Notes under the pieces: model-generated
Database searches by the model: none
The model's input: the letters and a program-made list of their open reading frames with translations, nothing else
Told to the model about the DNA's origin: nothing
From: Mizuhopecten yessoensis
Taxonomy: Eukaryota
DNA: 64,000 nt
Direction: 5' to 3'
NCBI RefSeq assembly: GCF_002113885.1
Contig: NW_018404662.1
Location: 854,114 to 918,113, forward strand
Program-made: the position numbers and the translations under genes
Shown here: positions 28,497-28,564 of the stretch, piece by piece
Layout of the letters: each line of letters starts with the position of its first letter
How positions within the stretch are numbered: position 1 is the stretch's first letter

Positions 28497-28564
28497 TTGA
28501 ATCTTCTTTATTAGGTAAATCTACCGGTTTCGCCTAAACAGTGGGCTTCTTCAGGACGATTCAA
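28497..28564 (-). ncRNA. Minimal type I hammerhead ribozyme (Penelope-associated)
   Basis: Minus strand: UUGAAUCGUC-CUGAAGA-A-GCC-cacuguuua-GGC-GAAA-CCGG-UA|GAUUU...GAUUCAA. Intact core, 3-bp stem II, palindromic stem III ACCGGU, GUA triplet. Confidence 0.75.

What the first reader, a model, noticed from the sequence alone, without database searches (positions are those of the whole stretch)
28497..28564. Apparently intact dimer-type hammerhead ribozyme between TATA and AATAAA signals
Seen on the minus strand: all conserved core nucleotides (CUGAAGA, GAAA, UA), stem II GCC/GGC, self-complementary stem III ACCGGU, and stem I GUC/GAU with a distal UUGAAUC/GAUUCAA helix. TATAAA lies ~50 nt upstream and AATAAA ~10 nt downstream of the predicted cut (28522/28521). 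Known: this layout matches Penelope pLTR hammerheads, which cleave as dimers. This is the best candidate for a catalytically active RNA in the window.
Basis: partly seen in the sequence, partly recalled or inferred. Interest (0 to 1): 0.7.

Follow-up and report, generated by a model that had tools for sequence, protein, structure and literature searches.

The report
Decayed Penelope-element hammerhead ribozyme copy
The motif is a real hammerhead-ribozyme sequence of the kind already known from Penelope-like retrotransposons, but this copy sits in a dead, broken and untranscribed fragment of the element, so it is a relic and not a working catalytic RNA.

Summary
The cut would fall at 28522|28521.

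The motif lies in a dispersed repeat:
- A core pattern gives 89 genome hits against 0 for the reversed control.
- A covariance model gives at least 145 hits.

Related copies sit just downstream of ORFs with reverse transcriptase plus a C-terminal GIY-YIG endonuclease. They also show pLTRs, head-to-head inverted partial copies and two alternative 3' ends. This makes it a Penelope-like element (PLE).

The motif meets the published hallmarks of PLE minimal hammerheads:
- a full catalytic core;
- an unpaired A between A9 and G10.1;
- a G10.1-C11.1 pair;
- a palindromic ACCGGU in place of helix III, which can pair only between two molecules.

Across five PLE families helix II covaries at three pairs, and the palindrome changes CCGG to CUAG. 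Rfam's hammerhead models miss all of these copies.

The window copy is worse than the family consensus:
- The fourth pair of helix II is lost, and helix I has a G.U pair.
- The distal helix is specific to this copy.
- The active dimer fold lies 9.4 kcal/mol above the predicted optimum, against 2.0 for the consensus.
- The host element is 5'-truncated and interrupted.
- No partner hammerhead lies in the window.
- Four RNA-seq runs show no reads from this copy and no cleavage ends.

Verdict: a new member of a known kind, of low interest.

The parts
28519..28557 (-). Minimal type-I hammerhead motif. It reads GUC (helix I 5' strand), CUGAAGA (C3-A9), a bulged A, helix II GCC(c)/(a)GGC with its loop, GAAA, the palindrome ACCGGU (15.1-16.1), A17, then GAU (helix I 3' strand). 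The predicted cut lies between 28522 and 28521.
   Evidence: (R1 gives 64.2 bits; family best is 74.6).
28497..28564 (-). This helix is specific to the window copy and is not conserved in the family.
28507..28512 (-). AATAAA, 9 nt downstream of the cut. An AAUAAA-like motif occupies this position in all five PLE families compared.
28606..28611 (-). TATAAA. It is only weakly conserved between families. A CRE-like inverted repeat TGACGT...ACGTCA lies upstream at 28622-28643.
28578..28590 (-). Box conserved between families, with consensus AGUACUUCAGGGG. The window reads AGUACUUCCGGAG. The consensus is complementary to CCUGAAG of the hammerhead core, so it may form an alternative 'off' pairing.
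28472..28484 (-). Conserved block TTGTTGCGATTGA, just upstream of the short-form 3' end of the element at 28460.
28347..28459 (-). The 'long tail', which is the 5'-UTR segment of the next unit. In intact relatives it ends at the ORF1 start codon. The window copy is a long-form copy that ends here.
28347..28800 (-). pLTR part of the dead PLE fragment. It is 87-96% identical to other family copies.
28801..29697 (.). About 0.9 kb of foreign DNA interrupting the element within a TA/CA microsatellite. Positions 28895-29439 are 91-96% identical to the 3' region of another PLE family (L048).
29698..30019 (-). Remnant of the 3' end of the element's second ORF, which encodes a C2H2 zinc-finger protein. 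The copy is 5'-truncated here, so no RT or EN remains.
30010..30088 (+). Short inverted piece of the same pLTR, joined head-to-head to the truncated 5' end. This is a typical PLE arrangement.
   Evidence: PMC8557442.

Best explanation
Window 28519-28557 (minus strand) is a slightly decayed copy of the minimal, dimer-dependent hammerhead ribozyme carried in the pLTR of a Penelope-like retrotransposon family.

How the family motif is built. The pLTR is the spacer between the last ORF of one unit and the first ORF of the next. In the family the motif keeps the full catalytic core, a bulged A after A9, and a helix II of 4-5 bp that starts with G10.1-C11.1. Helix I is 3 bp. Where helix III would be, there is a palindrome, ACCGGU or ACUAGU.

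How it most likely works (inferred). The palindrome has no loop, so it can pair only with the same sequence of a second RNA or a second repeat. Two copies would then build a double hammerhead, and each would cut after U16.1-H17 (here UA|GA). This would process element transcripts that contain the complete motif.

The window copy is a relic.
- Its host element is 5'-truncated, split by a nested insertion, and lacks RT and EN.
- Helix II has lost its fourth pair and helix I has a G.U pair, so a competing hairpin is favoured.
- No partner hammerhead is nearby.
- It is not detectably transcribed.

Shown here: the motif, membership of the repeat family, the PLE context, conservation and covariation between families, the decay of this copy, and its transcriptional silence in four runs. 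Inferred: dimer catalysis and the RNA-processing role, taken from published PLE hammerhead work and not tested here.
For: - Motif and coordinates.
- Repeat family: 47 further matches at 81-96% identity; 89 pattern hits against 0 control; at least 145 covariance-model hits.
- PLE context: a GIY-YIG ORF lies just upstream of the repeat. RVT_1 plus GIY-YIG occur in single ORFs of 662 and 772 aa in sister copies, and RVT_1 occurs in a copy of the same family. Direct pLTRs with the hammerhead flank the ORFs 3,777 bp apart and are 100% identical over the 98 bases held. The two 3' ends are.
- Hallmarks of PLE min-HHRs (PMC4209133) are met: an unpaired nucleotide between 9 and 10.1, G10.1-C11.1, and palindromic 15.x-16.x.
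- Conservation across five families: every core nucleotide is invariant although mean column identity is 68%.
- Covariation: three helix II pairs and one palindrome pair change on both sides. Standard pairs make up 88-91% of cells, against 15-47% when the partners are slid. Further variants are GACUC/GAGUC and GCCUC/GAGGC.
- Decay of the window copy.
- Fold: the double-hammerhead structure lies 9.4 kcal/mol above the dimer MFE for the window copy and 2.0 for the consensus.
- Truncation and nested insertion.
- Only one hammerhead of this kind in the window.
- RNA-seq: 0-5 reads per run at 95% identity or more. Every read over 28536 carries the consensus letter and not the window's letter. No pile-up of molecule ends was reported.
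Against: - No Rfam hammerhead model matches the window copy or three family representatives, even at E<=10. This is expected for motifs without a helix III hairpin, but it means no curated model supports the call.
- Helix I is only 3 bp and never covaries, so it is unsupported by comparison.
- No cleavage was shown for this family. Published PLE minimal hammerheads cleave poorly in vitro (PMC4209133), and in one case only with the element's protein present (PMC11167929).
- The window copy keeps all core nucleotides, so weak cleavage in vitro as an artificial dimer cannot be excluded.
- The RNA-seq sampled only about a fifth of each of four runs, and standard libraries capture cleavage ends poorly.
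Confidence: 0.85

Rival explanations
1. The window copy is itself a working self-cleaving ribozyme. It would pair in trans with transcripts of other family copies and cut at 28522|28521.
For: - All 13 core nucleotides, the bulged A, G10.1-C11.1 and the palindrome are intact, whereas about a quarter of the distinct family sequences carry core mutations.
- It scores 64.2 bits with the family model.
- Relatives are transcribed at low level on both strands, so partners in trans exist in principle.
Against: - There were virtually no reads from this copy in four RNA-seq runs.
- Helix II is reduced to 3 bp, then a mismatch, then one A-U pair. A competing hairpin (CCUGAA/UUUAGG) sequesters the core, and the active dimer fold lies 9.4 kcal/mol above the MFE.
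- No partner is present in cis.
- The host element is dead.
Confidence: 0.08
2. The family motif is conserved for a non-catalytic reason. It could be a core-promoter or 5'-UTR element, or a binding site for the element's RT, and the hammerhead resemblance would then have no cleavage role in vivo.
For: - At least 12 of 47 family matches begin at query positions 191-199, close to C3 (position 197), the first core nucleotide. Four of the minicopies read in sequence begin at 194-197.
- At least one TSD-flanked 222-nt minicopy begins there, which suggests that element RNAs start at that point. The motif would then lie at +1 to +35 of the transcript.
- The PAc study found hammerhead mutants still insert in vitro and found no RNA-seq ends at the cut site (PMC11167929).
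- PLE clades without hammerheads proliferate well (PMC8557442).
- No end pile-up was seen here.
Against: - Compensatory changes in helix II and in the palindrome point to RNA pairing and not to a DNA motif.
- Exactly the nucleotides needed for catalysis are invariant across families, while the loops and N7 vary.
- PLE hammerheads have been shown to cleave as dimers or with protein assistance (PMC4209133; PMC11167929; Lunse et al. 2016, as cited in PMC6466107).
Confidence: 0.06
3. The match is a chance hammerhead look-alike in AT-rich repeat DNA.
For: - A generic descriptor alone gives only p of about 0.05 per window.
- Rfam models are silent.
Against: - The core pattern gives 89 genome matches against 0 for the reversed control.
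- The motif is conserved with covariation across five PLE families whose flanks have diverged.
- Its position downstream of RT/GIY-YIG ORFs is constant.
Confidence: 0.01

Closest known systems
Minimal hammerhead ribozymes of metazoan Penelope-like elements (Cervera and de la Pena 2014, PMC4209133; Lunse, Weinberg and Breaker 2016, cited in PMC6466107)
   Same: - It lies in the pLTR of an element that encodes RT plus GIY-YIG.
- The catalytic core is complete, with an unpaired nucleotide between A9 and G10.1 and a G10.1-C11.1 pair.
- There is no helix III hairpin. A short palindrome takes its place, which implies a double hammerhead.
- Helix I is short, with an ill-defined loop 1.
- Most copies occur as single motifs in truncated elements, or as pairs on opposite strands a few hundred bases apart.
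   Different: - Helix II is short here (4-5 bp, against 6-8 bp reported for Schistosoma and Drosophila virilis).
- Helix I is only 3 bp.
- The six-letter palindrome ACCGGU resembles the D. virilis-type variant, which has a 2-nt palindromic insertion, more than the strict minimal form.
- Activity was not tested for this family.
PAc (Poseidon of Anolis carolinensis) hammerhead and internal RT initiation (PMC11167929)
   Same: - Units are tandem or partially tandem, with a pLTR between them.
- There are two alternative 3' ends (a 'tail'), one of them at the pLTR-ORF junction.
- The hammerhead lies in the same spacer.
- No RNA-seq ends were seen at the cut site.
   Different: - In PAc the ORF starts inside the hammerhead and the tail is 30-40 bp.
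- Here the hammerhead lies about 185 nt upstream of the ORF1 start, and the two ends are about 127 nt apart.
Double hammerheads of avocado sunblotch viroid and newt satellite 2 (as reviewed in PMC6466107)
   Same: Helix III is too short or absent, so two units merge their helix III arms to form the active structure.
   Different: Those RNAs come from tandem or rolling-circle multimers and yield unit-length circular or linear RNAs. Here the copies are dispersed, often inverted, and belong to a protein-coding retrotransposon.

Membership tests
Hammerhead ribozyme, PLE minimal (dimeric) class | Catalytic core: C3 U4 G5 A6 N7 G8 A9, G12 A13 A14, A15.1-U16.1 and H17 | tested here: met
   The window copy reads CUGAAGA ... 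GAAA ... U A. These positions are invariant across five families, while N7 (A or U) and H17 (A, C or U) vary.
Hammerhead ribozyme, PLE minimal (dimeric) class | Unpaired nucleotide between A9 and G10.1 (PMC4209133) | tested here: met
   An extra A follows CUGANGA in the window copy and in all 89 pattern matches.
Hammerhead ribozyme, PLE minimal (dimeric) class | Helix II closed by G10.1-C11.1 and supported by covariation | tested here: met
   G-C is present in the window copy. Three of the five helix II pairs change on both sides across families. In the window copy the fourth pair is broken (C.A).
Hammerhead ribozyme, PLE minimal (dimeric) class | Palindromic 15.x-16.x in place of a helix III hairpin, allowing an intermolecular helix | tested here: met
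   The window reads ACCGGU and sister families read ACUAGU, a compensatory change that keeps the palindrome. Cofolding predicts the 6-bp intermolecular helix.
Hammerhead ribozyme, PLE minimal (dimeric) class | Helix I flanking the core and the cut site | tested here: inconclusive
   There are only 3 bp (GUC/GAC; GUC/GAU in the window) and they never covary. The published range is 2-5 bp. The distal helix is specific to this copy.
Hammerhead ribozyme, PLE minimal (dimeric) class | Site-specific self-cleavage after H17 | not testable with these tools
   RNA-seq showed no pile-up of ends. Standard libraries and cross-mapping between copies make this uninformative.
Rfam hammerhead families (Hammerhead_1, Hammerhead_3, HH9, HH10, Hammerhead_II; family names from my own knowledge of Rfam) | Match to a curated covariance model | tested here: not met
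   No hammerhead model appears at the gathering score or at E<=10 for the window region or for three family representatives. As far as I know those models include a helix III hairpin, which this class lacks.
Penelope-like element (EN+ canonical) | A single ORF with RT followed by a C-terminal GIY-YIG endonuclease | tested here: met
   RVT_1 plus GIY-YIG occur in the 662-aa and 772-aa ORFs of sister copies that carry the same hammerhead. In the window's own family, GIY-YIG and RVT_1 pieces lie upstream of the repeat. The window copy itself retains neither.
Penelope-like element (EN+ canonical) | pLTRs from partial tandems, an inverted 5'-truncated partner, and an optional 3' tail | tested here: met
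   Direct pLTRs are and inverted pairs. Short and long 3' ends are. The tail here is about 127 nt, against the usual 30-40 bp (PMC8557442, PMC11167929).

The most novel reading that the evidence does not exclude
In this PLE family the element's own RNA may begin inside the hammerhead, at the helix I / C3 boundary.

The evidence is a cluster of 5' ends: at least 12 of 47 family matches, at least one of them a TSD-flanked 222-nt minicopy, and the head-to-head junctions all start there.

On this reading promoter-initiated RNAs lack the 5' strand of helix I and are immune to cleavage. Only read-through or multi-unit transcripts carry a complete ribozyme and get cut. The hammerhead would therefore sort transcripts and not merely trim them.

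One young sister element has an upstream pLTR that stops exactly at H17. This could be a genomic footprint of cleavage in vivo, with RT jumping onto the 3' end of a ribozyme-cut RNA.
Probability: 0.15. Interest if true: 0.55.

Novelty: new member of a known kind. Interest (0 to 1): 0.2.

Why it matters
For this window it matters little. The motif is an expected by-product of a dead Penelope-like element and should be annotated as repeat-borne, not as a candidate functional RNA gene.

At family level the genome offers several related PLE lineages with a well-conserved dimer-type hammerhead and clear unit boundaries. One apparently young copy is among them. This material could help settle the still-open question of what PLE hammerheads do. 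The clustering of copy 5' ends at the first core nucleotide is the one observation here that I did not find described in the papers I read.

Tried and rejected
- Rfam at the gathering score and at E<=10 gave no hammerhead hit, either on the window region or on three family representatives. I take this as a limit of the models and not as evidence against the motif.
- Fetching 10-kb contexts worked once. I therefore could not assemble a full-length copy of the window's own family or census all the junctions.
- A search for more junctions at H17 failed three ways. The second was too unspecific, since the control exceeded the signal. The third I mis-specified, so it found nothing. The corrected pattern shows that the junction is unique in the genome, so it stays an anecdote.
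- Read laying at 85% likeness gave mostly partial matches from related copies on both strands. It reported no begin or end pile-ups, and loose ends ran into heterogeneous flanks. This supports neither cleavage nor a start site at C3.
- I considered a transcription start 25-35 nt after TATAAA. The clustered 5' ends lie 56-57 nt after it, so the TATA box does not explain them.
- I considered a 3' splice site at the boundary, as in D. virilis Penelope. There is no AG at that position.
- The first shuffle simulation timed out, so I repeated it with faster mononucleotide shuffles.
- The Lunse et al. paper (PMC5785218) is not held. It is cited only through the reference list of PMC6466107.

Full report
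**1. Observation**

Read on the minus strand, 28564-28497 is, in order:
- UUGAAUC;
- GUC;
- CUGAAGA;
- A;
- GCCC-ACUGUUU-AGGC;
- GAAA;
- CCGG;
- UA;
- GAU;
- a 15-nt bulge that contains AAUAAA;
- GAUUCAA.

The cut after A17 falls at 28522|28521. TATAAA lies at 28611-28606 and AATAAA at 28512-28507.

My generic minimal-hammerhead descriptor requires CUGANGA, an optional bulge, a helix II of at least 3 bp, GAAA, 0-10 nt, UH, and a 3-bp helix I. It finds only this site on both strands of the window. It finds 0.05 sites per shuffled window, so chance alone is not excluded at this level.

**2. It is part of a repeat family**

The 401 bases around the motif have 47 further matches in the 988-Mb genome at 81-96% identity. 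The pattern GTCCTGANGA-N(12-26)-CGAAACYRGTHGAC has 89 matches, against 0 for the reversed control. A covariance model built from eight copies (R1) finds at least 145 matches among the 150 candidates scored. The window copy ranks about 32nd with 64.2 bits; the best copy scores 74.6.

**3. The repeat is the pLTR of a Penelope-like element**

Protein evidence:
- Directly upstream of other copies lies an ORF with a GIY-YIG domain, followed by a second ORF with C2H2 zinc fingers.
- Sister copies carrying the same hammerhead have single ORFs of 662 and 772 aa with RVT_1 followed by GIY-YIG. A copy of the window's own family has an RVT_1 piece.

Structural evidence:
- In one young sister element (C5482; L042 and L055) the hammerhead occurs in both flanking repeats, 3,777 bp apart. 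The repeats are 100% identical over the 98 bases held.
- Many copies form head-to-head inverted pairs.
- The family has two alternative 3' ends. The short end corresponds to window 28460. The long end lies about 127 nt further on, at about 28347. In relatives this extra segment is the 5' UTR and ends at the ORF1 ATG.

All of this matches published PLE architecture: pLTRs from partial tandems, an inverted 5'-truncated partner, an optional tail, internal RT initiation near the ORF start, and a bias toward TA microsatellites (PMC8557442, PMC11167929).

**4. The motif fits the PLE minimal hammerhead class**

Cervera and de la Pena (PMC4209133) list four features as non-random hallmarks:
- families with covariation;
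- a conserved G10.1-C11.1 pair;
- palindromic 15.2-16.2 positions, and a palindromic loop 3 where one is present.

All four are met here. An alignment of the window copy with five other copies, which together represent five families, has 68% mean column identity, yet every core nucleotide is invariant. N7 is A or U, and H17 is A, C or U.

Helix II occurs as GCCC/GGGC, GCCCU/AGGGC, GCCUC/GAGGC and GACUC/GAGUC. The palindrome is ACCGGU or ACUAGU.

Formal counts on the alignments give 88-91% standard pairs, against 15-47% when the partners are slid. Four pairs change on both sides, three in helix II and one in the palindrome. No shuffle reached the observed covariation score. Helix I (GUC/GAC) never varies, so comparison says nothing about it.

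Rfam's hammerhead models match neither the window copy nor family representatives, even at E<=10. I attribute this to the missing helix III hairpin.

**5. State of the window copy**

Relative to the consensus (UUCGGGC), the 3' strand of helix II reads UUUAGGC. These are CpG-type transitions, and one of them also occurs in some other family copies, including the window copy's closest relative L010. The fourth pair is therefore lost. Helix I ends in a G.U pair.

The 7-bp distal helix exists only in this copy.

ViennaRNA predicts that the mutated strand pairs with CCUGAA of the core. The double-hammerhead secondary structure lies 9.4 kcal/mol above the dimer optimum for the window copy. The figure is 2.0 for the consensus and 5.0-7.8 for two sister families. 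These nearest-neighbour energies ignore tertiary contacts and are only indicative.

The host element runs 30019-29698, then about 0.9 kb of foreign DNA, then 28800 to about 28347.
- The foreign DNA sits in a TA/CA microsatellite. It includes a piece 91-96% identical to the 3' region of another PLE.
- An inverted 79-nt piece lies at 30010-30088.
- Only about 320 nt of the second ORF survive, and there is no RT or EN.
- No second hammerhead of this kind lies in the window.

**6. Expression**

I laid four raw-read RNA-seq runs of the same species label, from three studies, on 28250-28850 at 85% likeness. About a fifth of each run was read.
- Only 79-397 reads were laid per run, and almost all were below 95% identity. 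Between 0 and 5 reads per run reached 95% identity or more.
- 91-98% of reads ran on into unlike sequence.
- Coverage was equal in both orientations.
- Every read over 28536, and most over 28535, carried the family consensus letter and not the window's own.
- No place where many molecules begin or end was reported.

The window copy is therefore silent in these data. Related copies are transcribed at low level, probably as passengers of other transcripts, and cleavage in vivo is neither shown nor excluded.

**7. Mechanism**

Shown: the sequence anatomy and its conservation.

Inferred: two copies of the palindrome pair between molecules or between repeats. This builds a double hammerhead in which each core cuts after H17. 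The inference rests on published work. A Schistosoma PLE minimal hammerhead cleaved weakly, and only as a dimer or trimer (PMC4209133). Lunse et al. reported dimer cleavage for many PLE variants (cited in PMC6466107). The Anolis PAc hammerhead cleaved only in the presence of the element's protein (PMC11167929). The biological role remains unsettled in the literature (PMC8557442).

**8. Beyond the finding**

At least 12 of 47 family matches start at query positions 191-199. In the minicopies whose sequence I read, the start lies at 194-197, which is the GUC|CUGAAGA boundary. They include short 222-nt copies that run to the ORF1 ATG. At least one of these is flanked by an 11-bp target duplication (TTGAAGATTAG). 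One internally deleted copy and one head-to-head junction break at the same point.

The simplest reading is that element RNAs have their 5' end there. RT starting internally at the ORF-proximal site would then run off after 222 nt. Such RNAs lack the 5' strand of helix I and could not self-cleave. This is inference; RNA-seq gave no start pile-up.

Separately, the upstream pLTR of the young C5482 element stops exactly at H17. That junction is unique in the genome, so it remains an anecdote.

**9. Verdict**

The motif is a genuine Penelope-type minimal hammerhead of a known kind. The copy in this window is a decayed, solitary and untranscribed relic. This scan has also noted Penelope-related hammerheads on other DNA of the same genome (s1-572314, s1-545962).

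Noticed in passing
window 10300-10410 (+): Three tandem 43-nt units each hold CUGAUGA ... CGAAAC, inside a foldback. This is a different hammerhead-like family, with a non-palindromic helix III region. Neither my generic descriptor nor model R1 picks it up. It is the subject of finding s1-512475.
   Followed up: partly
L035:6791-7471 (+), L031:7144-7740 (-), L055:2016-2642 (+); remnant at window 29759-30019 (-): A second ORF lies downstream of RT-EN and overlaps its end in another frame. It encodes C2H2 zinc fingers, and after its first Met reads MANTKQTT.RK, which resembles the N-terminus of histone H3. It is conserved in at least two PLE families that are 55-69% identical in ORF1. It was not mentioned in the PLE papers I read. 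Finding s1-572314 reports the same gene elsewhere in this genome.
   Followed up: partly
L042:1-98 and the merged C5482 locus (L042 + L055): This is an apparently young PLE, with 100% identical pLTR segments and open ORFs of 772 and 209 aa. Its upstream pLTR ends exactly at hammerhead H17 and is joined to the 5' UTR. The junction occurs once in the genome. It may be a footprint of a ribozyme-cut template, or a coincidence.
   Followed up: partly
L023, L025, L026, L028, L022(-), L027; window equivalent 28554-28557: Copy 5' ends cluster at the boundary between the helix I 5' strand and C3. They include 222-nt minicopies that end at the ORF1 ATG, and L028 has an 11-bp target duplication. This suggests an RNA 5' end inside the hammerhead.
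   Followed up: partly
window 28578-28590, 28472-28484, 28622-28643 (-), and alignment A1: The pLTR holds further blocks conserved across five PLE families. These are AGUACUUyAGGGG (complementary to CCUGAAG of the core), UUGUUGCGAUUGA just before the short 3' end, and CRE-like TGACGTCA palindromes upstream of a TATA-like box.
   Followed up: no
window 27790-27861 (-): The only Rfam hit at the gathering score in the window is a tRNA-like sequence (39.4 bits) with mismatched acceptor and anticodon stems. Sequences 77-79% identical occur in L033 and L034, so it is probably a tRNA-derived SINE or a pseudogene.
   Followed up: no
G000:C2256:88435-88525 (+); G000:C76743:579107-579202: Two hammerheads of this class lie 51 nt apart in direct tandem, and two others lie 15 nt apart head-to-head. 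The tandem pair is the arrangement that could form a double hammerhead in a single transcript, and it resembles animal retrozymes (bioRxiv 10.64898/2026.07.22.740005).
   Followed up: no
window 28895-29439: This piece is 91-96% identical to the region just downstream of the 760-aa ORF of another PLE family (L048). It is nested inside the older PLE fragment at a TA/CA microsatellite.
   Followed up: no
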